A DNA stretch of 64,000 bases from Gekko japonicus (taxonomy: Eukaryota), in the NCBI RefSeq assembly GCF_001447785.1, contig NW_015165855.1, positions 616,338 to 680,337 of the forward strand, read 5' to 3'. The translations under genes were made by a program, and so were the position numbers. Position 1 is the first letter of the stretch. Each line of letters starts with the position of its first letter. Below are positions 3,344 through 48,165 of this stretch, one piece after another. Below the pieces are notes generated by a model. That model worked only from the letters and a program-made list of their open reading frames with translations. It was not told where the DNA came from and ran no database searches.

Positions 3344-3593
3344 CTGGTTTCAATGATGCAGTTTAAAACAAGCAAAACCTCTCAAACCTTAATACATTCA
3401 TAGGCAGGATAGAAATTAAAGTCCAACTGGTTTAATTTAATGTTCATAATCTACTAAATTATTTCATCTGTTTAAATCTCAGTAGGTTTTAATAAACTAC
3501 ATCGGCACATTAATGTATTATAGTACTCCAGACGTGGTAAAGGGGTTATTGAGCATGTTACAGGAGGAAAAAAAATCACAACAGGGAACTTAC

Positions 3594-6005
3594 CTTCTCA
3601 CAACTCTGCATTTCAGAATTCATATTTTCTCCTCCGTTGTTTAGGATAGACACACCAGATTTGTCACCAGAAATAAAATTGTCTGCAATCTGAGCATGAG
3701 GTGTTAGGAAAGTAAACTGATTTTTCCTGGATTCTGAGGACAGACAAACCTGATAGGAATAAGGCAAAGTCCCATCTTCAAAATTTGGTGGGAAGATGGC
3801 ACCAGCACTTGAATGGGGAATAGGACCAAAACATTGCAGGAATTTGGGATTCCCTGATTTTCGAAGCTTCATCAGAATGGCCAGAATCACCGTCAAGAGG
3901 AACAAGAATGACATCAAAGCCAAGGCCAGCACCAGATAGAACTGCAGGTCGGACTGATAGTCAGGGCTGCTGGACTGGTTTTTCATTTCTGGAAGGGCCT
4001 CCTGAAAGTTCTCAGCAAACACCAGGTTCAGTGTCACAGTGGCTGAGAGAGATGGCTGCCCATTATCCCTCACCAAAATTCCCAGTTTCTGTTTTGCAGC
4101 ATCTTTCTCCACAAAGGCCCTTGCTGTCCTGATTTCTCCAGTGTGAGAACCAACAGTGAAGAATCCTGGTTCAGTGGCTTGAATGACATGGTAGGAAAGC
4201 CAGGCATTGTGTCCAGAATCAGCATCCACGGCCACCACCTTTGTGACCAGATATCCTGCCTCAGCCGAACGAGGTACCATCTCAAACAAGGCTGAGCCCC
4301 TGGCTTCTTGTGAAGGGGATAGTATCTGTGGGGTGTTGTCATTCCGATCCAAAATGAGCACCCTCACTGTGACATTGCTGCTGAGAGGGGGAGAACCACC
4401 ATCTTGGGCCTTCACTTGAAGCTCGATCTCTCTGAACTGTTCATAGTCAAAGGACCTCTGGGCATAGAGAGCTCCAGTCTCAGAGTTTATGGAGATATAT
4501 GAAGAGATGGGGAGCTCCTTGATGTTGCTGTGGAGGATGGAATATGTGATTTGTGAGTTTTGGTCCATGTCTGGGTCTGAGGCTTTGACAGTGAAAATGG
4601 AAGCACCAGAAGGGTTGTTTTCTAGCACATAGATGGCATAGGAAGACTTCTCAAAAGTAGGGGAATTGTCATTGATATCAGAGATCTGTACTGAGATGGT
4701 TTTGTGTGTTGACAGAGAGGGATTCCCTTTGTCTATGGCAATGACTGTAATATTGTACTCTGGAGTTCTTTCTCTGTCTAGTAGATGGTCTAAAAAGAGT
4801 TTGTAATAATGATTAGATGAAGGAAGAATCTTGAAGTGCTGATGTTCTGATAGGTGGCAAGTAACCTTTCCATTATCACCAGTATCTTTGTCATGTATAT
4901 TGATCAGAGCAATTAAGGTTTCAGTCAGGGAATCTTCAGGAATTGGGCTGTACAAAGAAACCAGAGTTACTTCTGGGGAGTTGTCATTTTCATCAAGAAT
5001 TTGTATTTCAACTTTGCAATGTGTCACTGAGCCACCTCCATCTTTTGCCGCTACTGTCATGGTATACTCTTTAATCTCCTCAAAATCCAGTGGTCCTATA
5101 AGTGTAATTGTGCCACTGGCTGAATCCAGGCTGAATTTCTGGTGGTCGTTCCCTTGTATGTTGTACCTGATTCGGGCATATGAACCTTCATCATTATCAG
5201 AGGCCACAACCTGAAGTACACAAGACCCAACAGGAGCATTTTCCTTCAGGCTGACCTTATAAACATCTTGGGTGAAAACTGGTGCATTATCATTGGCATC
5301 AGTGACATTAATCCATATATGGGTGGTCCCAGTTTTTCTAGGTTCTGCCCCATCCATAGCTGTTAGGATCAAGTGGAGGGCGTGTTCACTTTCTCGATCT
5401 AGTGGTTTCTGCAGTACTAAATCTGCAAATTTATTTCCATCCTGACTTTCTTTAACATCCAAAGTGAAGTACTGATTTTGACTAAGTTGATAATTTTGGA
5501 CAGAATTGGTCCCAATGTCAGGATCTTCAGCTTTCTCAAGGAGAAACCTGGTACCAGGTGAAGTAGATTCAATGATTTCCAAGTTGATATTGTCACTGAG
5601 GAAATGTGGTGCATTATCATTAATGTCCTGTATCATTATAGTTACATGGTAAATGTTTAAGGGATTTTCAATCACTAGCTCAAAATGTATAAGGCAAAGT
5701 GAAGTTGCATCACAAATTCCCTCCCTGTCTACTCTGTCATTTATATAGAGGTTTCCGTTTTCTGCACTGACACTGAAATATTGCATGTTAGTCAAAGACA
5801 CTGCATGCACATTGCGATCTTCTAGTTCTCTGGTATTCAGTCCCAAATCTTTGGCAAGATTCCCCACAATAGAACCCTTTGGCAACTCCTCGGGGATTGA
5901 GTAATGAAACTGATCTGAAGCAGCCCAGCAGGAGAAAGATAATAGTAAGAGAAGCAGTACTTGCCATTCAAGTGCCTGGCCATTGTCTCCGAGCCTTCTC
6001 TCCAT
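3594..6005 (-). CDS. PCDHGB: Protocadherin gamma-B-like variable exon
   Basis: 809-aa ORF with signal peptide and 6 cadherin repeats (DRE, DxNDNxP, AxDxG). gB hallmarks: [33 protein letters not shown]. Donor AAG|GTAAGT at 3594; unspliced stop at 3576. Confidence 0.96.
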
Positions 6006-12112: not shown

Positions 12113-12902
12113 GGCCCCGGTCATACGGGCCAGAAAATGTGGGGGGGGGGAGTGTGGCTGTTTGCCCCAGAGGAAAATAACACACGGTTGCACGATCAGA
12201 CGTCCCTTCGAGGTCCCGTGGAGGTCCCGTGGTTAGGGGGCAGGTGCCGATCACACGATGATCCTGCAGCACGGCAAAGAAGCGGTGCGGCGCAATCACA
12301 CCAGCAATCGCTAGGCGCCGCTTCTGTGGCAAACGGGATGGATTTTTTTTAAACTGAAGTTTGTGCATATGCATGACTGAGCAATCGTATCTGCACATCT
12401 GAAGGCGGGTGGTGGGCTGACCGGAGAGGGCGACAGATGCTTCCGGACCCCAACAGAGCTCCGAGGCATAGGCAATGGAGGGGGAGGTGGGCCCCCTCGT
12501 CACAGCCGCTCTAACCACCTGCGCGACAGTGGCCATAGCGACCCTCCAGAGGCAGCAAGCCTGGCTGCAGTGGGAGGGGGCCTCTTTGTGTGCATGCGCC
12601 GTTGGGCGCTTGTGCGCATCCTGTGGAGACTTGGGGGAAAAAACCTGTTCGCGACAGGACATGGGCGGGTGCTGGATGCCACGGGATTCCACCGGAAACG
12701 CGATCAGGCGCCCGCCCTTGCCCCGCGGTTTCAGGAAACTAGTACCTCGGAGGTACTAGTTTTTACCCCGCATCTTCAGCGGGAAGCCTCGGGTTCGGCA
12801 CAGGAGCTCTACGCTTCCCAGATGTGGCGCTGTGATCGCACCCGGAAAATCCGCCTTTCTTCTGTCTCTGTAGCGTGGCTAATGCTCCGTGTGACCGCAG
12901 CC
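12113..12902. mobile_element. PIF/Harbinger-like non-autonomous element, family 1 (intact)
   Basis: TIRs GGCCCCGGTCATACGG / CCGTGTGACCGCAGCC; 3-bp TSD TAG; internal perfect hairpin AAACTAGTACCTC-G-GAGGTACTAGTTT at 12736-12762. Confidence 0.85.
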
Positions 12903-13989
12903 TAGGAATGGGTTCACTGTCATTAGATAAGTTTTGTGGTGCACCAGCAGAATCAATGAGGCAGAAATTGTATATCAATAACACAGAAGTTTTTTGGATT
13001 TTTTACAGGTTGATTTCAACAAATGGCTCAGCATCACAGGTCTCCAGATAGTCAGAGAAGAAACCTGGCTGAGGCACATAAACTTAAGCTAGTTATGCCT
13101 TCAGAGTATGGTTTAAATTTTCTTCAATGCTTTCAGGCACAAACAGGCTTTTATTGACTAGTCACTAGGTTGGATCCTCGCACACATACAGGATTCCACC
13201 CACACCAACCTGCAGTTTCCCAAGACTCAGACTAACCTTTAACTGACTAAATACTAACTATCTCAGGAGTGCAAATATAATTCCAACTCACTTTATACAG
13301 AATAACTTTTCCCAATCTTCATCATCAATAGATCCCATCTCCCTCTCTCATTTAGCCTATCATACCTTGCAGGATTGTTCATGAGAATAAATGCAGTGGG
13401 TTGTTTTTTTCCAGAACAGCCATGCTTGTCTAAGCTCTTACATAGATTACAAATTAATGCACCTATTTTTTTACTGAAGGAATACAAGACCATAATATTA
13501 AATACTTTAGCAAATCCTTCAAATGCCAATTTCATGGGCAATCGATATTATTCTATCAATCACCTTACAAAAAACTTTCCCATCATTAGGCATACAGACA
13601 GGAAGATCAGAATTGAACTAAAATATACCAGAAATTTTGTTACAGACAAAATAATTAATCCTCAGTCCCTTGTTAAGGTACTTATCCACTGAAAATCTGT
13701 CAATTTAGTTTTGCGGAATACTGAAAGTAGTACTTTTCAAATCATGATCTGTTGCTATTATAACACTTCATATGGAGCAAGGCTACACCTTCAGAAAAAG
13801 TATGTGGCACAGCTCTCCTGTGACTGTATCACATCAAAACACGGGTGGGTAAGTCTTATATTTCCTGCCAACCTAGCAGTTCGAAAGCAAGAAATTGCAA
13901 GTAGATAAATAGGTACCACTTCGGTGGGAAGGTAACAGCGTTCTGTGCGCCTTGGTGTTTAGTTAGAGCGGGGGTTAAGATAAACAGTG

Positions 13990-14640: not shown

Positions 14641-15061
14641 TAGTCATGCCGGCCACATGACCACGGAAATGTCTTCGGACAGCACTGGCTCTTCGGCTTT
14701 GAAACGGAGATGAGCACCGCAACCCTAGAGTCAGATTCGACTGGCTTTCGAGCAAGGGAACCTTTACCTTTACCTTTAAGTCTTATATTAAAATGCCCCC
14801 AAGAATAAAAATGTCCCAGTACTAGGATGTGGGGGAGGATCACAAGCTAAAACACCTTGGTACAAGTTTTTCGTATGGAGGGAAGGAGAATGATTAAATG
14901 TGCAGTTACCCCTTGCCGTAGTACAATCCCAGGGGAATTCATGCGCTTTTCTGAATGTACAGATAGGCTGAGAACATGCACTTCAGATTGGTGGTAGAAT
15001 CTATGTATTGTACCTATAAGGTCTTGTGAGTCTGTTTCTACAGCAGTTTCTCTATCATGAA

Positions 15062-16594: not shown

Positions 16595-17132
16595 GGGTGC
16601 ATTCAGATGGCTTTTTATCCACGCGAGGCACAGGTGCCTCATGGATTTAAATGTAATGTCTAGACATCAACATCTGGGAAACGTCCGTCTTTCGTGAGCA
16701 TCCCATTTTGCCGTGCTTTGGAGCTGTACTAAAAAGATACTACTTTAAATCTAGAGTTTTTGGTTCCGATGGGCCACTCGCAGACTTTCCCCTGTCTGAT
16801 CGTTCCAGTGCGCAATTAAAAATGGCGCCCGTTTTGGATGGTCTGACGTCAGACCATCCCAAACAGGTGCCATTTTTTTTAAAAAAATCTTGATTCTGCG
16901 CATGCGTGAATAACCAAAGACGCAATATCATGCCTATGTGCATGTCGAAACTTTTGTTTTTTTTAAAATGCATTCGCGGAGGTACTAGTTTTTTACGGCG
17001 TATCTTCAGCGGGAAGCCTCGGGTTCGCCATGGGAGCTCTACGCTTCCCAGATGTTGCGGTTTGATCGCACCCAGAAAATCCGCCTATCTTCCGTCTCTG
17101 TAGCGTGGCTAATGCTCTGTGTGACCGCAGCC
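16595..17132. mobile_element. Chimeric Harbinger-like element (family 2 left arm, family 1 right arm)
   Basis: Left part matches the 36246 element; from about 16977 onward it matches 12748-12902. Termini and flanks (TTA vs AAA) do not match. Confidence 0.75.
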
Positions 17133-19765: not shown

Positions 19766-20956
19766 GCCCTGACCACTCTGCTAACCAAATAATCCAACAG
19801 CACCAAGAAGCCAAACAGAAACTTTCAAAAAGCTAACCATCTTTTATTGAAAAAATAAATAACTCTTTTAATTAGTAGGATGATAAAAAGTAGAAGCAAG
19901 TACAAGTTAACCCTAAAAGTACTTAAAAAACCCATATGCAAGGAAAATCAAATCTCCTAACATTTCTCAAGCATAATTGAATGTATGAGCTTAAGAGCAA
20001 ATCAGATTTCAAATAATTATTTCACAATGCTGTAGAAAGCTCTGTAAGCCCAGTATACCGGGGGGGGGGGGAGAAAGAGAGAGATATATCACCTGCATTC
20101 TTATGATAATCCTATTGCAGAAGCCTGATCAATTCTCTGTGTGATGCTTTTTATAGATAAGTGACAGCCACTAACTTAGACAAATTATTATAACTTTATC
20201 ATGTGATGATTCTGCAGACAAACTAAGATATATCCGATGCTTGTTATCTGCTCAAGCAAGGTGAACAAGGCTATATTTAGCACTTTACTAGTAATTAAAA
20301 AATGATAGTTCTATTTTTTCCATCAGCTACAATAATTGGTTGTCAAAGATAAAAATCCTGTACTTTTCCTGATTGGCTGCTGAACTTTGTACAACAGCTA
20401 TGAGAAATACATAAGAACATACATGTTTTGCATGCATATCATGACAATAATATACTTATTAAACACCTGAAGATGAATGTGTGGACTTATTCTGCTTAAG
20501 AGCACTTTGTCTGTCTGTTCTATCTTAGCTGGCTTATCAATGTATGGAAGTCATGTGAAGCAGGCAATATGGGAACTTTGCAATAATTAAGTACTGAACA
20601 ATCACATGGGAACATGTATAAAATTTCTCATTAACACATTTTCCATTTCCATGCTTTTTCTTCGTGTTTAAAAGTAATGTCCAATATAATGCACTGCCAC
20701 AGTTCTAAAAGTAATTCTCTCACATTAAAACTTTGGTCTGCAAAACGTGTAACAGTAAAAGGTGTACAGGGGAAGTATCTGGAATAAATATTTTGAAGCT
20801 TCTTGGAAGTAGATACAAAATCCAAGATAAACTACAATCTATATAATCCCCAACAGACTTCACCTACACTGAGAAACCACTGACAGGCTATGCATGCTTT
20901 TATCTCAAGCGTAGTAAAAGATAATGGGATCTGCAATGCAAATAATTCCAGCTTAC

Positions 20957-23377
20957 CTTGCCACCATTCTCCACCTCAGAATTTAAATTGTTTTGTTCAT
21001 TGCCTGTCAAAGGTGCACCAGGTCTGTTGGAACAAAGAAAGTTGTCTGCAATCTGAACACCAGGTGTCAGGAAAGTAAACTCATTCTTCCTGGATTCTGA
21101 GGAAAGACATAGCTGGTAGGAATATGGCAAAGTCCCATCTTCAAAATTTGGTGGAAAGATGGCACCAGCATTTGAGTGGGTAATAGGACCAAAGCACTGT
21201 AGGAATTTGGGATTTCCTGATTTTCTAAGCTTCATCAGAATGGCAAGAATCACCGTCAAGAGGAACAAGAATGACATCAAAGCCAAGGCCAGCACCAAAT
21301 AAAACTGCAGGTCAGACTGATAGTCAGGGCTGCTGGACTGGTTTTTCATTTCTGGAAGGGCCTCCTGAAAGTTCTCAGCAAACACCAGGTTCAGTGTCAC
21401 AGTGGCTGAGAGAGATGGCTGCCCATTATCCCTCACCAAAATGCCCAGTTTCTGTTTTGCAGCATCCTTTTCCACAAAGGCCCTTGCTGTCCTGATTTCT
21501 CCAGTGTGAGAACCAACAGTGAAGAATCCTGGTTCAGTGGCTTGAATGACATGGTAGGAAAGCCAGGCGTTGTGTCCAGAATCAGCATCCACGGCCACCA
21601 CCTTTGTGACCAGATATCCTGCCTCAGCAGAACGAGGTACCATCTCAAACAAGGCTGAGCCCCTGGCTTCTTGTGAAGGGGATAGTATCTGTGGGGTGTT
21701 GTCATTCCGATCCAAAATGAACACCCTCACTGTGACATTGCTGCTGAGAGGGGGAGAACCACCATCTTGGGCCTTCACTTGAAGCTCGATCTCTCTGAAC
21801 TGTTCATAGTCAAAGGACCTCTGGGCATAGAGAGCTCCAGTCTCAGAGTTAATGGAGATATATGAAGAGATGGGGAGCTCCTTGATGTTGCTGTGGAGGA
21901 TGGAATAAGTGATTTGTGAGTTTTGGTCCATGTCTGGGTCCAAGGCTTTGACAGTGAAAATGGAAGTACCAGAAGGGTTGTTTTCTAGCACATAAATGGC
22001 ATAGGAAGATTTCTCAAAAGTGGGGGAATTGTCATTGATATCAGAAATCTTTACTGATATTATTTTTTGTGTGGAGAGAGAGGGGATCCCTTTGTCAACT
22101 GCTATGACTGTAATATTATATTCAGAATTTTTTTCTCGGTCTAAAGGACTATCTGTCTGGAGCTTGTAGTAATTGTTAGAAGATGGAAGAATGTTAAAGG
22201 GCAAATCGTTTTGTAGTGTGCATGTAACTTCTCCATTTCCACTTGTATCTCTGTCATGTACATTGATCAGAGCAATTAAGGTTCCAGGCAAGGAATCTTC
22301 AGGAACTGGACTGAACAGAGAGACGAGATTCACTTCTGGGGAGTTATCATTCTCATCAACAACCCTTATTTCAACTTTGCACTGTGTCTCTAATCCGCCC
22401 CCATCTTTCGCTGCTACTGTCATGATGTATTCTTCAGTTTCCTCAAAATCCAATGCCCCTGTAAGAATAATTGAGCCATTGGTTGCATCCAGGCGGAATT
22501 TCTTGTTAGCATTCACCGGGACATTGTTGAAATGATACTTGATCTGGGCATTGGAACCTTCATCACTGTCAGTAGCAAGAACGTTGAGTAGAAGGGAGTT
22601 AATGGGAGCATTTTCTCTCACACTGGCCCTGTAGACCTCTTGAGTGAAGATGGGCGGGTTGTCATTGGCGTCAGTGATACTGATGCACACTTCTGCAGTA
22701 CCAGTTTTTCTTGGCTCACCCCCATCTACAGATATAAGAACCAAGCAGAAGGCCTGTTCCCTTTCTCGATCCAGTGGTTTCTGCAGAACCAAATCTGCAA
22801 ATTTATTTCCATCTTGACTCTCTTTAACTTCCAAAGTGAAATACTGGTTGGGACTGAGCTGGTAGTTCTGGACAGAATTCATCCCAATGTCAGGATCTTC
22901 AGCTTTCCCAAGTAGAAATCTGGTCCCTGGCAAACTGGATTCAATAATTTCTAAGTTGATCTTGCTTTCTAAAAAATGTGGTGTGTTATCATTAATATCT
23001 TGAATGGCTACAGTTATATGGAAAACATTCAAAGGATTTTCAACTACTGCTTCAAAATTCACAAAACAAAGTGGGTTTTTACCACAAATACCCTCCCTGT
23101 CTATTCTGTCATTTACACAGAGGTTTCCATTCTCTGCATTGATACTGAAATATTGTACTTTAGACATAGCTACAGCATGCAGTTTGCTCTTTGCTAGTTC
23201 TCTGGCGTCTAATCCCAAATCCTTGGCGAGATCCCCTACAATTGATCCCTTTGGCATCTCTTCGGGGATTGAATAACGAATCTGTTCTGAAGCAGCCCAG
23301 CAGCACAAAGACAATAGTGAAAGAAGCAGTACTTGCCTTCTGAGTATCCAACAATCCCCTTCATGCCTTTTGTCCAT
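20957..23377 (-). CDS. PCDHGB: Protocadherin gamma-B-like variable exon
   Basis: 825-aa ORF, 6 EC repeats, gB motifs; donor AAG|GTAAGC at 20957. Confidence 0.96.
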
Positions 23378-23594
23378 CTTGCTCTGTAAAAACAGTTTCT
23401 TCTTCTGTATGTTTTGAAGAGGACTATCACCAGAACAAAAAGAATCTTAATAAGGAAGAAAAAGCGTCTCCTTTTTCTTAATCTGTACAACCGGAAGAAT
23501 ATCGTCCTTTTCAGCAAGACTACTGTTTGTGGTCTGTTTTTTTTCCCCTGTAGCTGTACAGCATTAAGGGAGGTACTTGTGGACATCCACCTAG

Positions 23595-23637
23595 GTTGAC
23601 CAACAGTGACACTATGAGGCTCAGACAGAGAACTGCA
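23595..23637 (-). promoter_or_regulatory. Pcdh CSE/CTCF element (CACT variant, CCAAT degenerate)
   Basis: GTTGACCAACAGTGACACTATGAGG...AACTGCA, 218 bp from the ATG. Confidence 0.78.
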
Positions 23638-24487
23638 AGTTTGAAACGGAGACTTTATGTGGATATGTGAGCTTGTGGGTTTGTTAAAAACAAACAGGTA
23701 TTAAAAGTGTGAGTATGAAAATATGGAGATTACACACCTTCATTAAACCTTTCAACAGAGGAAGTGTAGAAATTGAGCTAGAACAGTGAAACAGTAAAAT
23801 GAGAAAAGTATGTGTTTCTTACATTACCATATTGCGTACTTTGTTTGTATTTTCCTACTTCCTTCTGCCTGCAATACATAGTTAAGACTACCTCCATCTC
23901 AGATCTCCCACCAATATTTTGCTGATACCTGAATTGGTGCTTAGATAAACACTGGCTTTCTTTATAGAGCTGGGGGGGGATGCTTAATCCTATAGTTTTG
24001 TACAGTTGCTATAATTTTTATTTCTTTTCTTTTAGAAATCAACCTTTCCACCAAACTAAAAAACTCTATTGCATTTTTACTTTCTAATTTTATACTGGAA
24101 ATACCAGTACTATACACTACACAGTGAAATGATGCATACTGAAGAGTAAAAGAATGGGAAACAATCCCAAATTACTTACTAACAATTTTTAAGATTTCCA
24201 GCTAAATGTAGAGAGTATAACACAGCACTGCTATTATACTTCATTCGGATATGCAGGGCTGTCACTGAAAAGCACAGCCCTGTTTATGTTCTGGTTTCCT
24301 CCTCTAATAACATAGATAACATATGTGAGGTGATGTCATTCCTTCTTAGGTCCCACCCCCGATACACGCATACACCATTCCATTGGCTGCTGTTTGCAAG
24401 ACTGAGCACACTCAGACATGTGATAACACAGATTATGCTTTACTCATATTACAAGAGAAAAAGAGATGGGGCTATTGCTTTGTTAAA

Positions 24488-24779
24488 GAGAGCCAGTTTG
24501 GTGTAGTGGTTAAGTGTGTGGACTCTTATCTGGGAGAACCGGGTTTGATTCCCCACTCCTCCACTTGCATCTGCTGGATGACCTTGGGCAAGCCATAGTT
24601 CTGGCACAGCTGTTCTTGAAAAAGAGCAGTTTCTGTCAGAGCTCTCTCAGCCCCACCTCCCTCACAGGGTGTCTGTTGTGGGGAGGGGAAGGGAAAGGAG
24701 TTTGTAAGCCACTCTGAGACTCCCTTGGGTAGTGAAGGGCGGGGTATAAATCCAATCGTTTCTTCTTCTTCTTCTTCTT
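24488..24779 (+). mobile_element. Squam3-type tRNA SINE
   Basis: GAGAGCCAGTTTGGTGTAGTGGTTAAG head, GGTTTGATTCCC B box, (CTT)n tail. Confidence 0.8.
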
Positions 24780-25367
24780 TGGGGGCACCCATCACACCTA
24801 GTGCTACTCTTCCTAAAAATGAGATGTTTTCAACTGACAGCAAAAACAGGCTTCTCAGTTGCATGGAGAATGATATACACACCTACACTTGTACGCATGT
24901 AGACTGTATTCAGAACTTACAATGAATAAACACTTGTGTATGTTAGGGGTGGAGCTTGCCATTATGTTCCCAATTCCCCTGATAGAGTTATTAAAGAACT
25001 TGTTGACTCAAGTGTACTATCCCAACTTTTAGTACATGTCAGTTCAAGGTTGTTGTTTTTTTGGGGGGGGGTCTTTTTAATTTTAGAAGTTAATTAAAAA
25101 ACATACCCTCCCTATCGCCTAGTGGACAGGGGCACAAACTCAGACACATATCTATTCTGTGCATTATCTCTTTTATGGCTTTGATAAAATAGGCCTTTTT
25201 GGCCTAGTTAAGTTCATGCCCTGAACACACAATAAATTTATTAGCCTTAAGATGTTACAAGAAGACTTTTTTTTGGGGGGGGGGAAGCTCTGACCCTCTA
25301 GCTTTGCTGTATGATACACTACTACTAACATGCAAGTAAGCTGTTGTATCTATACATACACTTATTA

Positions 25368-25938
25368 GGCTCCGGTCACATGGGCTGGAAAATGCGGGGG
25401 GGAAGCATGGCTGTTTGCCCCGGAGCAAAATAATGCGCGGCTGCACAATCAGATGACCGGTTGAGGTCCCTCGAGGTCCCGTGGTTAGGGGGGAGGTGCT
25501 GATCACACCACAGGCAAGGAAGCGGGGTGGGGTGGCAAACGGGGTTGTGGTTTTTTTTTAAACTGAAGTGTGGGCATGCTCCGTTGGGTGCTTGTGCGCA
25601 TCCCATGGAGACTTGGGGGGGAACCTTTTTGCGAGGGGATATGCGCGGGCGATCAGACGCCCACCCTTGCCCCACGGTTTCCGGAAATCTGTTCTGAAGC
25701 AGCCCAGCAGCACAAAGACAATAGTGAAAGAAGCAGTACTTGCCTTCTGAGTATCCAACAATCCCCTTCATGCCTTTTGTCCATCTTGTACTAGTTATTT
25801 ACCCCGCATCTTCGGCGGGAAGCCTCAGGTGAGCCACGGGAGCTCTACGCTTCCCAGATGTGGCGCTGTGATCGCGCCCGGAAAATCCGCCTATCTTCCG
25901 TCTCTGTAGCGTGGCTAATGCTCCGTGTGACCGCAGCC
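25368..25938. mobile_element. PIF/Harbinger-like element, family 1, carrying a captured Pcdh fragment
   Basis: TIRs GGCTCCGGTCACATGG / CCGTGTGACCGCAGCC; TSD TTA; homologous to 12113-12902. Confidence 0.87.
25686..25788 (-). other. Exact 103-bp duplicate of the Pcdh exon 5' end (ATG plus signal peptide)
   Basis: Base-for-base identical to 23279-23381. Confidence 0.95.
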
Positions 25939-26540
25939 TTAGTTTGTTTTCCTTATCAGTATGCTGATTACGTTCCCTCCCAATCCATCTCACTATATCA
26001 GAGATCATCCAAAGATTCCTTCTGATTTTTGCTATCTCCAAAAAACAAGCTTGAACACAGAGACCACAGATATAGAACTCTTTCTTCCTCAAAGCCCAAG
26101 CATCTTCTGGCAATATTTTAATGGTTCTAGAAAACCTCAATAACAAGTTACCATGCAAGCAACAGAAGTGGTAGTGCACTGCATCAATGTGATTAAAGAA
26201 ATGATTTACATAAAGCAGGGAGCCTTTGCACCAGTACACTGTGAACATTAATAGAGATATGAGGAAGCTCATAGGGGCCTGTGTGGGAATGTAGCCCATT
26301 CTCTAGCATTATACATTTGTGAGCAAACCTATAAATATCACCTTTATTTTTATATTTATATAATTTATATTTATATAATTAATAATATATTATTTAATAA
26401 ATTAAATATATTGTTTAATAAATTTATTAATTTAATAAAAGTGCAATAGAAATCCAGACTGTTAGCATGAAGACAGGATTCAACCCATGACCAGATAAGA
26501 TGGATGAAAAATATCTTCAGCGTGTATTTGAACCTCATTA

Positions 26541-26886
26541 AAGGTAAAGGTTCCCTTCCTCGAAAGCCAGTCGAATCCGACTCTAGGGTTGCGGTGCTCA
26601 TCTCCGTTTCAAAGCCGAAGAGCCAGCGCTGTCCGAAGATGTTTCCGTGGTCATGTGGCCGGCATGGCTAAACACCAAGGCGCACGGAACGCTGTTACCT
26701 TCCCACCGAAGTGGTACCTATTTATCTACTTGCAATTTCTTGCTTTTGAACTGCTAGGTTGGCAGGAGCTGGAACTAGAGACGGGAGCTCACTCCGTCAT
26801 GCGGCAACCTGGGTCTCGAACTGCTGAACTACTGACCTTCCACAGCCTGCAGTTCAGCGTCTTAACCACTTGAGCCACCGCAGCTC
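26541..26886 (-). mobile_element. Sauria SINE, full length
   Basis: ACCTTT tail, tRNA-like head, TSD CCTCATTA. Confidence 0.9.
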
Positions 26887-27439
26887 CCTCATTATCTGTC
26901 TTCTATTTCCAGAGGTGACTGCAGATAACACGAGAAAAAAATTAAGGCCATGGGTATATTTTTGGATTCACTGACTATGCTCCCATTAGCAGGCACATTC
27001 CAGTTGATCAAACAGAGGATGTTGGATATTGAGTGTCAGGAGTTACATAGTCTCGCCAACAAAACCTGCTCTCCTTTGAGCTTTGAGATACCCCTCACTG
27101 TAGGTAGGATGGCTTCATATTTATTCTCCCTACAAGCACCACAACTACGCAGAGCTTTCTCTTTAGCCAGATGCAATGCCATGTCATGCCATCTGCCATT
27201 CTATATGTCTCTGACCCCAAGGACTCCTGCTGGTTGCTAGACCATTCCTGGCAATCTCTTTCCTTCAACTTCTACAAACTACATGATGATTCCTGGCAGC
27301 TGTTTTCTTGCAATGTTCCCCCCACTACCACCTTTCTCCCTCAGTCCCTCAGGAGAAAGGCAACTGTTCTTTACATCACACTAGGAAATAGGCCTGCTAG
27401 GAGACATAGATCCTAATATCAGATGTAGACTGGGTGATG

Positions 27440-30775: not shown

Positions 30776-31343
30776 ATAGCTAGAAAAAAATGAGCAAATG
30801 AATATTTCTTCTAAATCCCTGCCCAAGGGCCAAGTATGCTTGACATAACCTTTTGCTGCATGATGAAAGATCGAGGGTGGCCCTGGTGGACCATTTAAGC
30901 CCTCCCTCCCTGCCCCCCAGTAGTGACACTCCTACATGCCCAGCATTGGAACAGATAAACACCTCCCCATGCATGGGGACACCTCCAAAACCTGCCCCTT
31001 CCCCCAACTCAGTGAAAGGTGGGATGGAGTGGCAATATGTTTGAACACAGCCTCTGAAAGGAGTCCCATCTTGGGGAAGCTGCCATAACGCAGTACCAAC
31101 TACCTTCGGGGTCCTGCATTATGCTTCCTCACCACTGATCGCTTAGATGTTGCACTTTCTACAATAACAATGATGCTATTTCCATATAGTATTAAAGAAC
31201 ATTGAATGTATGTTAACTGAATCTATTTAAAAATATTTTGGCACATCTGCTGATAAACATACTAGAAATTAAAAAAAAACCAGCCTGGACATGAAGAAAT
31301 TAAGAGCTTAATGCAACACATAAATCACATATTCTTCGCTTAC

Positions 31344-33751
31344 CTGGACAAAGGCCTGATTCCCAGTACCAATGTCTTCCACAATGAGGATGGGATCCTC
31401 TATCTGTTGATCAGTTAGTGCATTGGAATTATCTGCATTGGGAAATGTGCATTTGGTTTTCCTAGAGTCTGCGGTGAGTGAAATTTCTTGGCAATAAGAG
31501 TGAAGAAATGCTCGGACTCCATCAATACCCACAAACTGTGAAACTGGGACGCCACTGAAATTCATGCTTGCAGAATCACATAACTGAGAATTCCTCCATT
31601 TGTGAAGTCTGAGTGCCAGTAAAACAAGGAGGAAGGTGAAAAACAAGCAGGAGACAAAAGCCACAGCAACCACCAGGTAGAAGGTGAGGTCCGACTGGGG
31701 GTCTGCAGGAGCTGGGATGCTGCTAATATCAGAGAGGCTTTCAGGGATGCTGTCGGCCAGCACCACAGTGACTGTGACTGAGGCAGACAGAGGGGGCTGC
31801 CCATTGTCCTTCACTAAAACCACCAGGCTTTGCTTGAGAGCATCCTTGTCCAGAAGGAAACGGGCCGTCCTGATCTCCCCAGTGTGGAGTCCTATGGAGA
31901 AGAGCCCTGGCTCTGTGGCCTTGAGTAGCTGATAGGAGAGCCATCCATTCTGGCCAGAGTCTGCATCCACTGCCACCACCTTAGTGACCAGGTAGCCAGG
32001 CTCAGAAGAGTGGGGGGCCAACTCTACTCCAGTGGAGCCATCGATGGGGACAGAAGGGTACAAGATCTGGGGGGCATTGTCATTCTGATCTAAAATAAAG
32101 AGAGTCACTGAGATATTGGAGCTGAGTGGTGGGGAGCCTCCATCCCGAGCCTTGACCTGGAAATGTATCTCCACCAAGTCTTCATAATCGAAGGAATGCA
32201 GGGCATAGACTACCCCAGTCTCAGAATTAATGGAGAGATAGGAGGAGGAGAAGGAGTCATCCATCTGACTTTCTATGATGGAATAAGTTATTCTGGAGTT
32301 CTCCTCCCAATCTGGATCATCTGCCTTGAGTGAGAAAACAGACGATCCTCTTGGGTTGTTCTCCATCAGGTAGCAGGCATAGGTTGTTTCTGTAAAGAGG
32401 GGAGGATTGTCATTTGTGTCTAAAATCTGGAGTAAGAGTGTGCAGCTGGTTGAAAGTGGAGGCATCCCATGATCAGTGACGCCAATGATGATATTGTAAA
32501 ACGGCATATGCTCCCTGTCCAGAGCGCTCTCTGTCACCAGACTGTAGTAATTATTGTAAGTTTTCTCCAGCTGAAAAGGCAGGTTGGTGTCAATGGAACA
32601 AGAGACTTTCCCATTGGTTCCAGAATCTTGATCGTGTATCTTTAAAAGGGCGATGACTGTCCCTGCTGGTGAATCCTCAGACACTGAGTTGACTTGTGAA
32701 GTTACTTCTATCTGGGGTATGTTGTCATTCACATCAGTAACTGTTATCAGTACTTTGGCTCTGTCAAACAACCCTCCTCCATCCTTTGCTTGTACCTCAA
32801 ATTCATAAAGAGGCAATTCCTCATAGTCAAGGATCCCTGCTAATGTTATTTCACCTGTAGTGGAATTTAGGACGAACATTTGTGAAGCAGTCTCTCCAAT
32901 TTTTTTGAAGGAATAATTTAACTCTTTGTTAATTCTTCATCCTTATCAGTGGCGGTTACTGTGCAGACTGTGGATCCTGTCTGGAAATTCTCTTTGACAC
33001 TCACTTGATAGACAGATTGACTGAAAATTGGAGCATTGTCGTTTGCATCTAGAACACTGACTTGAATTTGAGCGGTTCCAGATCGGATTGGATCGCCCCC
33101 ATCAGATGCTATAAGGATTAGCTCATACTCTGACTGCTCCTCCCTGTCCAGAGAGCTTTCCAAAACCAGCTCTGCATGTCTGGCACCATTTTCTCCCATT
33201 TGAACAGCCAAAGCAAAATGGCTACTGCCAATGAGCTGGTAGTTCTGTATAGAATTTATGCCTAGGTCTGGATCTTGAGCTTCAGGCAGGGGGAATCGAG
33301 ATCCTGGAGCAGAAGTCTCACTGATAGTCAGTTCTTGTTCTCCGGGTGGGAAGTGGGGAGCATTATCATTTATATCTGTAATTTCCACTTCGACTGCATA
33401 CACTTTCATTTTATTTTCAACAATCACATCACACTTCAACAGACACTTCTGTGTTCTGCCACAGATCTCCTCTCTGTCTATTCTTTCTGCAGTGTATAAA
33501 CGGCCAGTTTCATAATTCCAAGCAAAATATTGGATCCTACCTCCACAACCAATGCGGACTTTGTTGCCTGTTTCCTTCATGTCCATTCCCAGGTCTACTG
33601 CAATATCCCCCACCAATGATTCTTTCTGCATTTCTTCAGGAATTGAGTACTGAATCTGTCCAGAAACCTCCAATATTGTAATCATCATGAAGAAAATCAA
33701 GCCTCTTCTGGCTGAATGCTGGGATCTTTTTCCCGTGCTCATCTTCCCCAT
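31344..33751 (-). pseudogene. PCDHGA: Protocadherin gamma-A-like variable exon with a 1-bp frameshift (pseudogene or sequence error)
   Basis: Split into ORFs 32918-33751 and 31308-32879. Restoring one G at 32935 gives DKDEGINKELNYSFKKIGETASQMF. gA motifs: LKQSLVVLVKD, SDLTFYLVVAVA, VGIDGVRAFL. Donor CAG|GTAAGC at 31344. Confidence 0.9.
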
Positions 33752-33920
33752 TTCACAAAGGCATTTGGATTTTATCTTCAGCCGTACGTTACCAAGAATG
33801 CCTGCAAATATTCTGCTGCAGATTGTCTCTCTTTGGTTTCATGCCGGATCAGTCAGTGAAAATCTGATCTGTCTGTTTTTGTATTTGAACAGCAAGGCAA
33901 GACTGGATGCATCTCTGAAC

Positions 33921-35098: not shown

Positions 35099-36245
35099 TT
35101 CTGGTTTCATACCTCCCATTATAAAATACTTGTGTCTTTTTGGGATGAACACTTGATTCATGTCAAAATTATGTCATAAGTATTTCTGATTATTGTTGTA
35201 CTAAAATAACTGTGTAATGAAGAGGCACCGTTTTTCACTGATCCTGTAAACAGATGGAATATGGTGCAAATGCTTACATCATTTAAATGTTATCCCACCT
35301 GTCTGGATCTGCTCACAGAAAACAGGCTGTCATGTGAATCAGGCAAGGTTATGTAGTGTAGTACCCAGGAGGGACTTACTAGTAGTACATAAGTTTTGAA
35401 CAAATCAGGGCAAAATGCATAATGTTAAGTAACAAAACTTACACAGAGAAAACAAAACAAAAACATACATGCTAAATTAAATATAGCAAGAAAGTAAAGT
35501 ATACCTCTCACTTTTTCACCACCTGGCAGGCTAAAATCAAATCACACACTCTTGGGCACATAAAGAACCATGTCCTTCTTTATACCTTCCAAGAAACACA
35601 CAAATCAGGTAGTTCTGAAGAAACCCAAAATTATTTCATTTCAAATTTTAATAAAGAATTAGAAATGAGTCAGTGAACAAAGCAGAAAACCAAATGTCTA
35701 GCAGTATGCGGAGAGGATGCTTATGTAGCCACAGGGATGAATGGATGAGAAATGTACAAAACAAGCAAAGGAAAAAAAAGCATAGGAAAAGAAAACAATA
35801 ACTCAATATGCCATACTGAAAAATTAAACTTTATCCCTAGTAGGCTTGGCATTATACTTATTTATTTACTTCATTTCTACCACACCTTTCTCCCCAATAG
35901 GGACCCACTACCACAACACCACAAAATTCAGTTGTTCAAGAATACCCAAATTAATATTCATAATCAAAGAACCCTACCACTGACTTATTTCAATGCATAG
36001 TAAGATGCTTGACCAATTACTAAAATATTTTCCTACCAGCATTTAAACAAAATCAGGTTGATTTATTAGTGGCCAGCAAACAGCGAACTTTTCAAACAGT
36101 AAATTATGTCAGAATTGCCAGAGATTTAGAATTCCTTCCTCTTAATGATCCACTAGATCAGAAGGTGGTAATGATAAATCATGATTTCAGCATGATTTTG
36201 ACTACTCCCGATTTCACGATTCTATCATATGCTTTGGTTTACTGT

Positions 36246-36771
36246 GGGTGCATTCAGACGGCTCTTTAGATCTGCACCATGCACGAGTGCCTGGTGGATT
36301 TAAATGTAATTTCCAGACAGCAACATCTGGGAAACGTACCTCATCCGTGAGCATCCTGTTTTGCCACGCTTTGGAGCCGTATTAAAAAAAGTAAACTGGA
36401 GTTTTCAGTTCCTGACGGGCCATTCACAGACTTTCCCCCGTCTGATTGTTACAGCGCGCAATTAAAAAATGGCGCCCGTTCAGGATGGTCTGACGTCAGA
36501 CCATCCTGAACGGTCGCCATCTTAAAAAAAACTCTATTAAGCGCATGCGCGGAGAAACAAGGACGCAATTGTGCTTGCACAAACTTCCTTAAAAAAACCT
36601 CACTGTGCATGCCTCCTTCAGTGGATGCTGTCTGGACAATTCACAGTGGAGGCAGCGCACAGTAAGACAATTCACAAGGGGCTGTCTGGTCGTGCAATGA
36701 TGGATTTAAAAAATCAGGATCAAATTAGAGCCGGGATAATGGCAGGACTAGCTGCCCATCTGAACACACCC
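36246..36771. mobile_element. Harbinger-like non-autonomous element, family 2
   Basis: TIRs GGGTGCATTCAGACGG / CCATCTGAACACACCC; 3-bp TSD TGT; central perfect 38-bp palindrome at 36476-36513. Confidence 0.83.
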
Positions 36772-36799: not shown

Positions 36800-37167
36800 N
36801 NNNNNNNNNNNNNNNNNNNNNNNNNNNNNNNNNNNNNNNNNNNNNNNNNNNNNNNNNNNNNNNNNNNNNNNNNNNNNNNNNNNNNNNNNNNNNNNNNNNN
36901 NNNNNNNNNNNNNNNNNNNNNNNNNNNNNNNNNNNNNNNNNNNNNNNNNNNNNNNNNNNNNNNNNNNNNNNNNNNNNNNNNNNNNNNNNNNNNNNNNNNN
37001 NNNNNNNNNNNNNNNNNNNNNNNNNNNNNNNNNNNNNNNNNNNNNNNNNNNNNNNNNNNNNNNNNNNNNNNNNNNNNNNNNNNNNNNNNNNNNNNNNNNN
37101 NNNNNNNNNNNNNNNNNNNNNNNNNNNNNNNNNNNNNNNNNNNNNNNNNNNNNNNNNNNNNNNNNNN
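36800..37167. other. Assembly gap (368 N), probably a BovB insertion
   Basis: N run preceded by GTTGTTGTTGTTCAGTCGC, identical to the BovB tail at about 33997-34015. Confidence 0.9.
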
Positions 37168-47659: not shown

Positions 47660-48165
47660 GGCCCAAGCTTTCCAGAGCTTGGAAACTAAGCAGGACTGGC
47701 CATTGTTATTATTGGGCTGGGGCACCACCCAGGAAAGGAGCTGCGGTGGCTCAAGTGGTTAAGACGCTGAACTGCAGGCTGTGGAAGGTCAGTAGTTCAG
47801 CAGTTCGAGACCCAGGTGCCGCATGACGGAGTGAGCTCCCATCTCTAGTTCCAGCTCCTGCCAACCTAGCAGTTCGAAAGCAAGAAATTGCAAGTAGATA
47901 AATAGGGAAGGTGGGAAGGTCACAGTGTTCCATGCGCCTTGGTGTTTAGTCATGCCAGCCACATGACCACAGAAACATCTTCGGACAGCGCTGGCTCTTC
48001 GGCTTTGAAACGGAGAGGAGCACCGCAACCCTAGAGTCGGATTCGACTGGCTTTCGAGCAAGGGAACCTTTATCTTTACCTTACCACCCAGGAAGACCTG
48101 GGTTGTTATGCTGAGGAGGGTGATGGCAAACCAGCTCTGTTCATCTCTTGACTTGAAAGCCCCAC
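47660..48165 (+). mobile_element. 5S rRNA-derived SINE interrupted by a Sauria SINE
   Basis: GCCCAAGCTTTCCAGAGCTTGGAAACTAAGCAGGACTGGCC aligns by eye to 5S GCCCGATCTCGTCTGATCTCGGAAGCTAAGCAGGGTCGGGCC; tail ATGGCAAACC...GAAAGCCCCA. Confidence 0.6.
47736..48082 (+). mobile_element. Sauria SINE, full length
   Basis: Near-identical to the 26541 copy; TSD ACCACCCAGGAA. Confidence 0.9.

What the first reader, a model, noticed from the sequence alone, without database searches (positions are those of the whole stretch)
25686..25788. MITE has captured the ATG and whole signal peptide of the neighbouring Pcdh exon, exactly at its hairpin
Seen: 103 bp identical to 23279-23381 (2407 bp away, same orientation) lie inside a Harbinger-like element with intact TIRs and TTA TSD. 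Relative to the copy at 12113, the insert replaces 14 bp (CTAGTACCTCGGAG) of the hairpin, with AA and G junction microhomologies. It creates a 43-codon minus-strand [46 protein letters not shown]. Inference: a recent hairpin break was repaired by templated insertion from nearby DNA or nascent RNA, giving a Pack-type element that could still be mobilized and spread a signal-peptide module. This is the most novel-looking feature in the window.
Basis: partly seen in the sequence, partly recalled or inferred. Interest (0 to 1): 0.8.

Follow-up and report, generated by a model that had tools for sequence, protein, structure and literature searches.

The report
Protocadherin leader patch inside a MITE
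A 100-base copy of the start codon and signal peptide of a nearby protocadherin exon sits where an old miniature transposon's central palindrome was broken. It is a neat but ordinary example of a DNA-repair patch ("single-copy Pack-TIR"), with no sign of spread or expression.

Summary
Window 25686-25788 equals 23279-23381 at 103 of 103 bases. It lies inside a 571-bp Harbinger-like MITE (25368-25938, TTA duplications). It replaces 14 bp at the apex of the family's 27-bp palindrome, with 2-nt and 1-nt junction microhomologies. The donor is the protocadherin exon: its leader is homologous to those of the paralogous exons.

The best reading is a one-off, transposition-independent repair patch. An internal break at the palindrome was filled by template switching to DNA 2.4 kb away. 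This matches every feature described for single-copy animal Pack-TIRs by Tan et al. 2021, so it is a new member of a known kind.

The exon's promoter box was not captured. Depth shows the segment at one to two copies, and RNA reads show nothing over the insert.

My single read-laying run was swamped by repeats and gave no junction rows. Indirectly, contigs from two deep runs carry the MITE at this locus but show no graph branch at the donor borders. The patch is therefore private or polymorphic in the reference lineage, or less likely an artefact.

"Still mobilisable, spreading a signal-peptide module" is unsupported.

The scan has noted similar captures elsewhere in this gecko genome (BMPR2, MED28, DHX38 cargo).

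The parts
25686..25788 (-). Copied patch. It is 103 bp identical to the donor; the net new DNA is 25688-25787 (100 bp), with AA and G shared with the MITE. It holds 4 nt of 5'UTR, the ATG and codons 1-33 (the signal peptide).
23279..23381 (-). Donor: the 5' end of the protocadherin variable exon (ORF 20900-23377). The leader is homologous to those of at least 5 paralogous exons.
25368..25938 (+). Host MITE copy B (Harbinger/Tourist-like). It has 16-bp TIRs (14/16 complementary) and 3-bp TTA duplications at 25365-67 and 25939-41.
25685..25687 (+). Remnant (AAA) of the left palindrome arm in copy B.
   Evidence: searches compared
25788..25800 (+). Remnant (GTACTAGTTATTT) of the right palindrome arm in copy B.
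25653..25784 (-). 43-codon chimeric mini-ORF (33 exon codons plus 10 MITE codons). No promoter was captured, there is no Pfam hit, and no RNA support was seen.
12113..12902 (+). Reference MITE copy A, with TAG duplications. It carries the intact palindrome at 12736-12762 (13-bp arms; DNA fold -13.3 kcal/mol, z -5.5).
16977..17132 (+). Third copy of the right-hand module. It starts within 2 nt of the palindrome centre and is fused to a different, family-2-like left half (16595-16976). The flanks do not match (TTA / AAA).
23594..23639 (-). Conserved promoter box (CSE-like, with CCAAT) of the donor exon, about 220-260 nt upstream of the ATG. It is NOT part of the copied patch.

Best explanation
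This is a germline DNA break inside an already resident, old MITE. The break fell at or next to the tip of its 27-bp palindrome (hairpin/cruciform, or a stalled fork). The ends lost 14 bp. One 3' end then annealed by 1-2 nt of microhomology to DNA 2.4 kb away on the same chromatid or sister. It copied 100 nt (the 5' end of the neighbouring protocadherin exon) and rejoined the other end.

The result is a single-copy "Pack-TIR", that is, filler DNA made by transposition-independent gap filling. The patch is an inert by-product. It has the ATG and signal peptide but no promoter and no splice donor. It lies in the intron of the upstream protocadherin isoforms.

Shown: the anatomy, the direction of copying, the relative age, and low copy number. 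Inferred: the break mechanism, a DNA (not RNA) template, and germline reality in the reference animal.
For: - Exact 103/103 copy with abrupt borders. It is the only isolated exact repeat in the window.
- The donor leader is homologous to the paralogous exons, so the exon is ancestral.
- The patch replaces 14 bp at the palindrome apex, with AA and G overlaps. The palindrome folds strongly as DNA.
- A second family copy is broken within 2 nt of the same apex.
- MITE copies are 90-93% alike, while the patch has 0/103 differences. If the patch were as old as copy B (about 3.75% branch), about 3.9 differences would be expected, P(0) about 0.02. So capture came long after insertion.
- Contigs of two deep runs cross the MITE's left border at this locus (X1 record 8 and X2 record 16, 24788-25395). 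Their contigs also run unbroken through the donor borders 23278/79 (X1 record 2, X2 record 11) and 23381/82 (X2 record 12). This suggests a MITE without the patch in those animals.
- Junctions with 1-2 nt overlap are not what overlap- or k-mer-based assemblers create.
- All features match single-copy Pack-TIRs: most donors lie under 5 kb away, median microhomology is 2 bp, the gap has a median of 4.6% of the TE (here 14/485, about 3%), breakpoints are internal, and exon cargo is enriched.
Against: - No read or contig shown to me bridges either junction.
- Apparent absence in X1 and X2 is equally what an artefact would give.
- A 27-bp palindrome is short for a classical fragile site.
- The third copy (C) could be a member of a hybrid subfamily rather than an independent break.
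- Microhomologies of 2 and 1 nt are not significant by themselves.
Confidence: 0.68

Rival explanations
1. Artefact of the reference assembly or of its library (chimeric molecule, clone rearrangement at the palindrome, or a wrong gap fill). On this reading the animal has the plain palindrome.
For: No junction-bridging read was obtained. Two other deep runs appear to lack the junction branches. Palindromes are known trouble spots for cloning and polymerases (general knowledge). The window has at least one gap, 36800-37167, and one frameshifted exon that could be an indel error.
Against: The flanks stay perfectly colinear. Exactly 14 bp are replaced by a clean 100-bp copy with 1-2 nt overlaps, and assemblers need long overlaps to join sequence. 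A chimeric single molecule would not win a consensus. No other isolated exact patch exists in 64 kb. The reference haplotype differs from X1, X2 and X22 at many SNPs here, so a private variant is plausible.
Confidence: 0.17
2. The break and the patch are the same, but the template was the exon's (nascent) RNA, copied by a reverse transcriptase or Pol theta, as proposed for class 2 templated sequence insertions.
For: The cargo is transcribed sequence in sense continuity. The donor exon has low RNA coverage in X21. Class 2 TSIPs show the same junction features and evidence for RNA origin.
Against: The patch lies within one exon, so no intron loss can be seen. Its 5' border (4 nt before the ATG) is not the transcript start, because the promoter box lies about 220-260 nt upstream. 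Strong cis proximity is the hallmark of DNA-templated gap filling. RNA templating is much less efficient than DNA.
Confidence: 0.1
3. Capture was coupled to transposition (abortive gap repair after excision, or FoSTeST). The chimeric element is a live Pack-Harbinger that can carry the signal-peptide module elsewhere.
For: TIRs and TTA duplications are intact. Earlier unchecked notes report recently mobile Pack-type Harbingers with MED28 and DHX38 cargo in this gecko.
Against: The gap is tiny and internal, not terminal. The donor is in cis at 2.4 kb, whereas multicopy Pack-TIRs are distal. The family copies are 7-10% diverged. The MITE predates the patch. Depth over the donor segment is about 1-2 copies in X1, X2 and X22, so there has been no amplification.
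Confidence: 0.05

Closest known systems
Single-copy Pack-TIRs made by transposition-independent gap filling (Tan et al. 2021, PMC8277862)
   Same: Host DNA sits between the two halves of one TIR element that keeps its TIRs and TSD. The parental copy is intact and in cis (under 5 kb). Microhomology is about 2 bp. The internal gap is small. Capture came after insertion. The cargo is exonic.
   Different: Here the break can be pinned to a defined 27-bp palindrome apex. The cargo (100 bp) is below their median of 224 bp and is still 100% identical to the donor. Squamates and Harbinger elements were not discussed in the text I read.
Filler DNA / abortive gap repair in plant and fly class II elements (Ac/Ds, Mu, P element). 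This comparison rests on my own knowledge and on the citations in PMC8277862.
   Same: Template switching during repair copies nearby sequence into a deleted element.
   Different: Those events follow transposase-induced excision and usually remove large internal parts. Here only 14 bp are lost, and the event long post-dates insertion.
Class 2 templated sequence insertion polymorphisms (Onozawa & Aplan, PMC5110952)
   Same: A patch at a double-strand break with no TSD and no poly(A); microdeletion plus microhomology; the donor stays intact; probably polymorphic.
   Different: TSIP donors are distant and thought to be RNA-derived. Here the donor is 2.4 kb away and nothing points to RNA.
Pack-MULEs and multicopy Pack-TIRs (mobile gene-fragment carriers)
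   Same: A TIR element carrying a host gene fragment.
   Different: There is no evidence of further copies, mobility or transcription. A defining feature (amplification) was tested and not met.
Pol theta / SD-MMEJ templated insertions (PMC2943611)
   Same: Short microhomology priming, copying, then rejoining.
   Different: Typical inserts are a few to tens of nt copied from within about 100 bp of the break. This one is 100 nt from 2.4 kb away.

Membership tests
Single-copy Pack-TIR (gap-filling type) | Non-TE host sequence lies inside one TIR element that keeps both TIRs and its TSD | tested here: met
Single-copy Pack-TIR (gap-filling type) | An intact parental copy lies nearby on the same chromosome | tested here: met
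   The donor is 2407 bp away and the exon ORF is intact.
Single-copy Pack-TIR (gap-filling type) | Microhomology at the breakpoints and a small internal gap | tested here: met
   AA and G overlaps. 14 bp were lost out of about 485 (3%), at relative position 0.34.
Single-copy Pack-TIR (gap-filling type) | The TE without cargo is present at the orthologous locus in other lineages | tested here: inconclusive
   The MITE's left border is present in X1 and X2 contigs. Absence of the patch is only inferred, from unbroken donor contigs.
PIF/Harbinger (Tourist-like) MITE | 3-bp target site duplication | tested here: met
   TTA/TTA for copy B and TAG/TAG for copy A. A 3-bp TSD is the rule for this superfamily (PMC2213677 abstract).
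PIF/Harbinger (Tourist-like) MITE | TIRs shared with an autonomous element that encodes the DDE transposase and the Myb-like ORF1 | not testable with these tools
   No autonomous partner lies in the window and no genome-wide search was available.
Mobile / multicopy Pack element (Pack-MULE-like) | The same cargo-bearing element occurs at several loci with new TSDs | tested here: not met
   Depth over 23222-23443 is at single- to two-copy level in X1, X2 and X22. There is only one chimeric copy in the window.
Class 2 TSIP (RNA-derived patch) | RNA origin of the patch (spliced or transcript-bounded cargo) | tested here: inconclusive
   The cargo lies within one exon. Its border is not at the inferred transcript start.

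The most novel reading that the evidence does not exclude
The 27-bp palindrome of this gecko MITE family may be a recurrent break-and-capture hotspot. That would give the "internal fragile sites" inferred for animal Pack-TIRs a concrete sequence identity. In that case this young, probably polymorphic patch would be one of many such events in a genome where Harbinger transposase may still be active, so that some patches could be mobilised.
Probability: 0.2. Interest if true: 0.5.

Novelty: new member of a known kind. Interest (0 to 1): 0.27.

Why it matters
This is a very clean, undecayed example of how a resident DNA transposon picks up a piece of a neighbouring gene without moving. The break point maps to a specific palindrome, and the donor is still 100% identical. 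If the palindrome proves to be a recurrent break site across the family, it would explain where such captures start. As it stands the patch has no promoter, no expression and no spread. It tells us about repair, not about protocadherin biology or new genes.

Tried and rejected
- **Read laying.** I laid 23000-26300. The output was swamped by the SINE at 24443-24775 and by MITE copies. No joint, loose-end or contig row for 25685/86 or 25788/89 was printed. A narrow stretch would have been better.
- **The listing of cluster members.** The first call timed out. In the second, the two ORFs that span the junctions were not in the collection, which is uninformative.
- **The search of earlier findings.** Searches by sequence and by all words were blank.
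- **Readings rejected:**
  - The exon leader derives from the MITE. Rejected because the paralogous exons share the leader.
  - A small mobile element sits at both sites. Rejected because there is no TSD or TIR, and the borders are abrupt.
  - An old patch was kept identical by gene conversion. Rejected because 103 bp is too short and there is no flanking homology.
  - The patch's border marks the transcript start. Rejected because the promoter box is about 220-260 nt upstream.
- **Searches not run.** I did not run the large protein searches; Pfam settled the exon's identity.

Full report
**Observation**

Window 25686-25788 is identical to 23279-23381 at 103 of 103 bases. The two are in the same orientation and 2407 bp apart, and there is no similarity one base beyond either border. 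Among all exact repeats of 30 bp or more in the window, this is the only one that is not part of a longer homologous pair of exons or transposons. It is therefore real in the sequence and far beyond chance.

**The donor**

The donor is the 5' end of a minus-strand protocadherin variable exon, ORF 20900-23377, 825 codons.
- Pfam finds Cadherin_2 from residue 32, five Cadherin domains and Cadherin_C_2.
- The copied piece is 4 nt of 5'UTR, the ATG and codons 1-33. This is the leader up to the start of EC1.
- The leader is homologous in protein and DNA to the leaders of the other variable exons in the window. So the exon is ancestral and the copy in the transposon is derived.
- A conserved promoter box (...GTGTCACTGTTGGCCAAT-like) lies about 220-260 nt upstream of each ATG, here at about 23594-23639. 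It was not copied. The patch's border is therefore not the transcript start.

**The recipient**

The recipient is a 571-bp non-autonomous TIR element at 25368-25938.
- Its ends are 14/16 complementary and it has TTA on both sides.
- A longer copy at 12113-12902 has TAG on both sides. It carries a perfect palindrome, AAACTAGTACCTC-G-GAGGTACTAGTTT, at 12736-12762. This folds as single-stranded DNA at -13.3 kcal/mol, z -5.5.
- A 3-bp duplication and GG-starting TIRs fit PIF/Harbinger (the 3-bp rule is in PMC2213677). The link to a transposase could not be tested.
- In copy B the 14 bp CTAGTACCTCGGAG at the apex are replaced by the patch. AA is shared at the left junction and G at the right. The net new DNA is 100 bp.

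**A second break at the same place**

A third copy of the right-hand module begins within 2 nt of the palindrome centre (cg|GAGGTACTAG..., 16977-17132). It is fused to the left half of a different, distantly related element, and its flanks do not match. If breaks were uniform along the element, only 27/485, about 6%, would hit the palindrome. This supports, but does not prove, that the palindrome is a preferred break site. Copy C could instead belong to a hybrid subfamily.

**Relative age**

The three right-hand modules are 90-93% identical pairwise. This gives copy B a branch of about 3.75%. A patch as old as that would be expected to show about 3.9 differences in 103 bp, P(0) about 0.02, yet it shows none. 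The capture therefore came long after the MITE inserted.

**Reads**

The look-up of sequencing runs gave two deep runs kept as contigs (X1, X2; same study, different samples), one raw WGS run (X22) and one raw RNA run (X21). My single read-laying run on 23000-26300 was swamped by a very high-copy SINE (24443-24775) and by MITE copies. No row for either junction was printed.

Indirect points:
1. X1 record 8 and X2 record 16 (647-nt contigs) run from unique DNA across the MITE's left border (24788-25395). So the MITE is at this locus in both animals.
2. X1 record 2 (23123-23315) and X2 record 11 (23244-23315) run through the donor's left border. X2 record 12 (23287-23687) runs through its right border.
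   - With 31-mer graphs, a second identical copy would force breaks at 23308 and 23352 (one search shows duplicated 31-mers start at 23279-23351 in the window itself).
   - So these animals probably lack the patch.
   - This depends on how the contigs were simplified and is not decisive.
3. Depth over the donor segment is at single- to two-copy level in X1, X2 and X22. The chimeric element has not amplified.
4. RNA depth in the insert bin (about 2.5) is what MITE-edge reads alone would give, and the donor exon is only weakly expressed in X21.
5. The reference differs from X1, X2 and X22 at many shared SNPs in 23000-24400. It carries a divergent haplotype, which makes a private young variant plausible.

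**Mechanism**

The anatomy is that of filler DNA: an internal break, a small loss, a copy of nearby DNA, and 1-2 nt overlaps.

Tan et al. 2021 (PMC8277862) describe 370 Pack-TIRs in 100 animal genomes. They conclude that single-copy ones arise by transposition-independent gap filling. Their criteria and this case:

| Feature in Tan et al. | Their finding | This case |
|---|---|---|
| Distance to donor | 57% within 15 kb, most under 5 kb | 2.4 kb |
| Microhomology | 1-36 bp, median 2 | 2 nt and 1 nt |
| Gap size | median 4.6% of the TE | 14/485, about 3% |
| Breakpoint position | skewed to "internal fragile sites" | internal, at the palindrome apex |
| Timing | capture after insertion | patch much younger than the MITE |
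| Cargo | excess of exonic sequence | exon leader |

The case fits every criterion. I therefore read it as a one-off repair patch.

An RNA template, as in class 2 templated insertions (PMC5110952), cannot be excluded, but nothing favours it.

A transposition-coupled origin and a still-mobile Pack element are unlikely. The gap is tiny and internal, the donor is in cis, the family is old, and the copy number is low.

**Artefact?**

Against an artefact:
- the flanks are colinear;
- the replacement is clean;
- the overlaps are only 1-2 nt, whereas assemblers join on long overlaps;
- there are no other isolated patches in the window.

For an artefact:
- no bridging read was seen;
- the patch is apparently absent in two other animals;
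- the site is a palindrome.

I put the artefact at about 17%.

**Other attempts**

- The listing of cluster members timed out once. It then showed that the two junction-spanning ORFs are not in the collection, which says nothing.
- Earlier notes of this scan (unchecked) say the genome is a gecko. They report similar captures elsewhere: a BMPR2 exon in a hAT MITE, judged a one-off patch, and multicopy Harbingers with MED28 or DHX38 cargo. The first of these led me to the Pack-TIR paper, which I read myself.

**Verdict**

This is a new member of a known kind and of modest interest.

Noticed in passing
window 16595-17132: A chimeric element. Its left half is family-2-like (TIR GGGTGCATTCAGATGG, with its own large palindrome at 16816-16878). 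It is fused, within 2 nt of the family-1 palindrome centre, to the family-1 right module. The flanks do not match (TTA / AAA). The family-1 and family-2 TIRs are related (about 11/16).
   Followed up: partly
window 3576-6005 versus 20900-23377: The 3' halves of two variable exons 17 kb apart are 96-98% identical (for example 4307-4606 vs 21670-21969, with exact runs up to 129 bp). Their 5' halves are only about 75% alike. This is likely gene conversion between paralogous protocadherin exons.
   Followed up: no
window 31308-33760 (minus strand): The variable exon that starts near 33700 changes reading frame at about codon 275 (...ATDKDEE, then stops; it continues in another frame). It is either a pseudo-exon or a 1-nt assembly error.
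   Followed up: partly
window 24443-24775: An extremely abundant SINE. It has about 10^4-fold depth in a roughly 1x sample of raw WGS reads and is abundant in RNA. It swamps read-laying on this stretch.
   Followed up: no
window 26539-26887 versus 47737-48078, also 13863-13962 and 14641-14772: Copies of another repeat family that are 95-100% identical over 80-170 nt in inverted orientation. This is a young TE family inside the cluster.
   Followed up: no
window 23000-24400: The reference differs from X1, X2 and X22 at many shared SNPs (for example 23406, 23599). So the reference carries a divergent haplotype here. In X2 a 72-nt contig (23244-23315, T at 23277) has about twice the depth of its neighbours, which hints at a second locus sharing that stretch.
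   Followed up: partly
window 25331-25996: Read depth over the MITE's right-hand module is several-fold higher than over its left half. The right module may be shared by several element families.
   Followed up: no
window 36800-37167: The only N run in the window (368 bases). It lies beside a family-2 element (about 36200-36760) and inside a 311-codon plus-strand ORF call.
   Followed up: no
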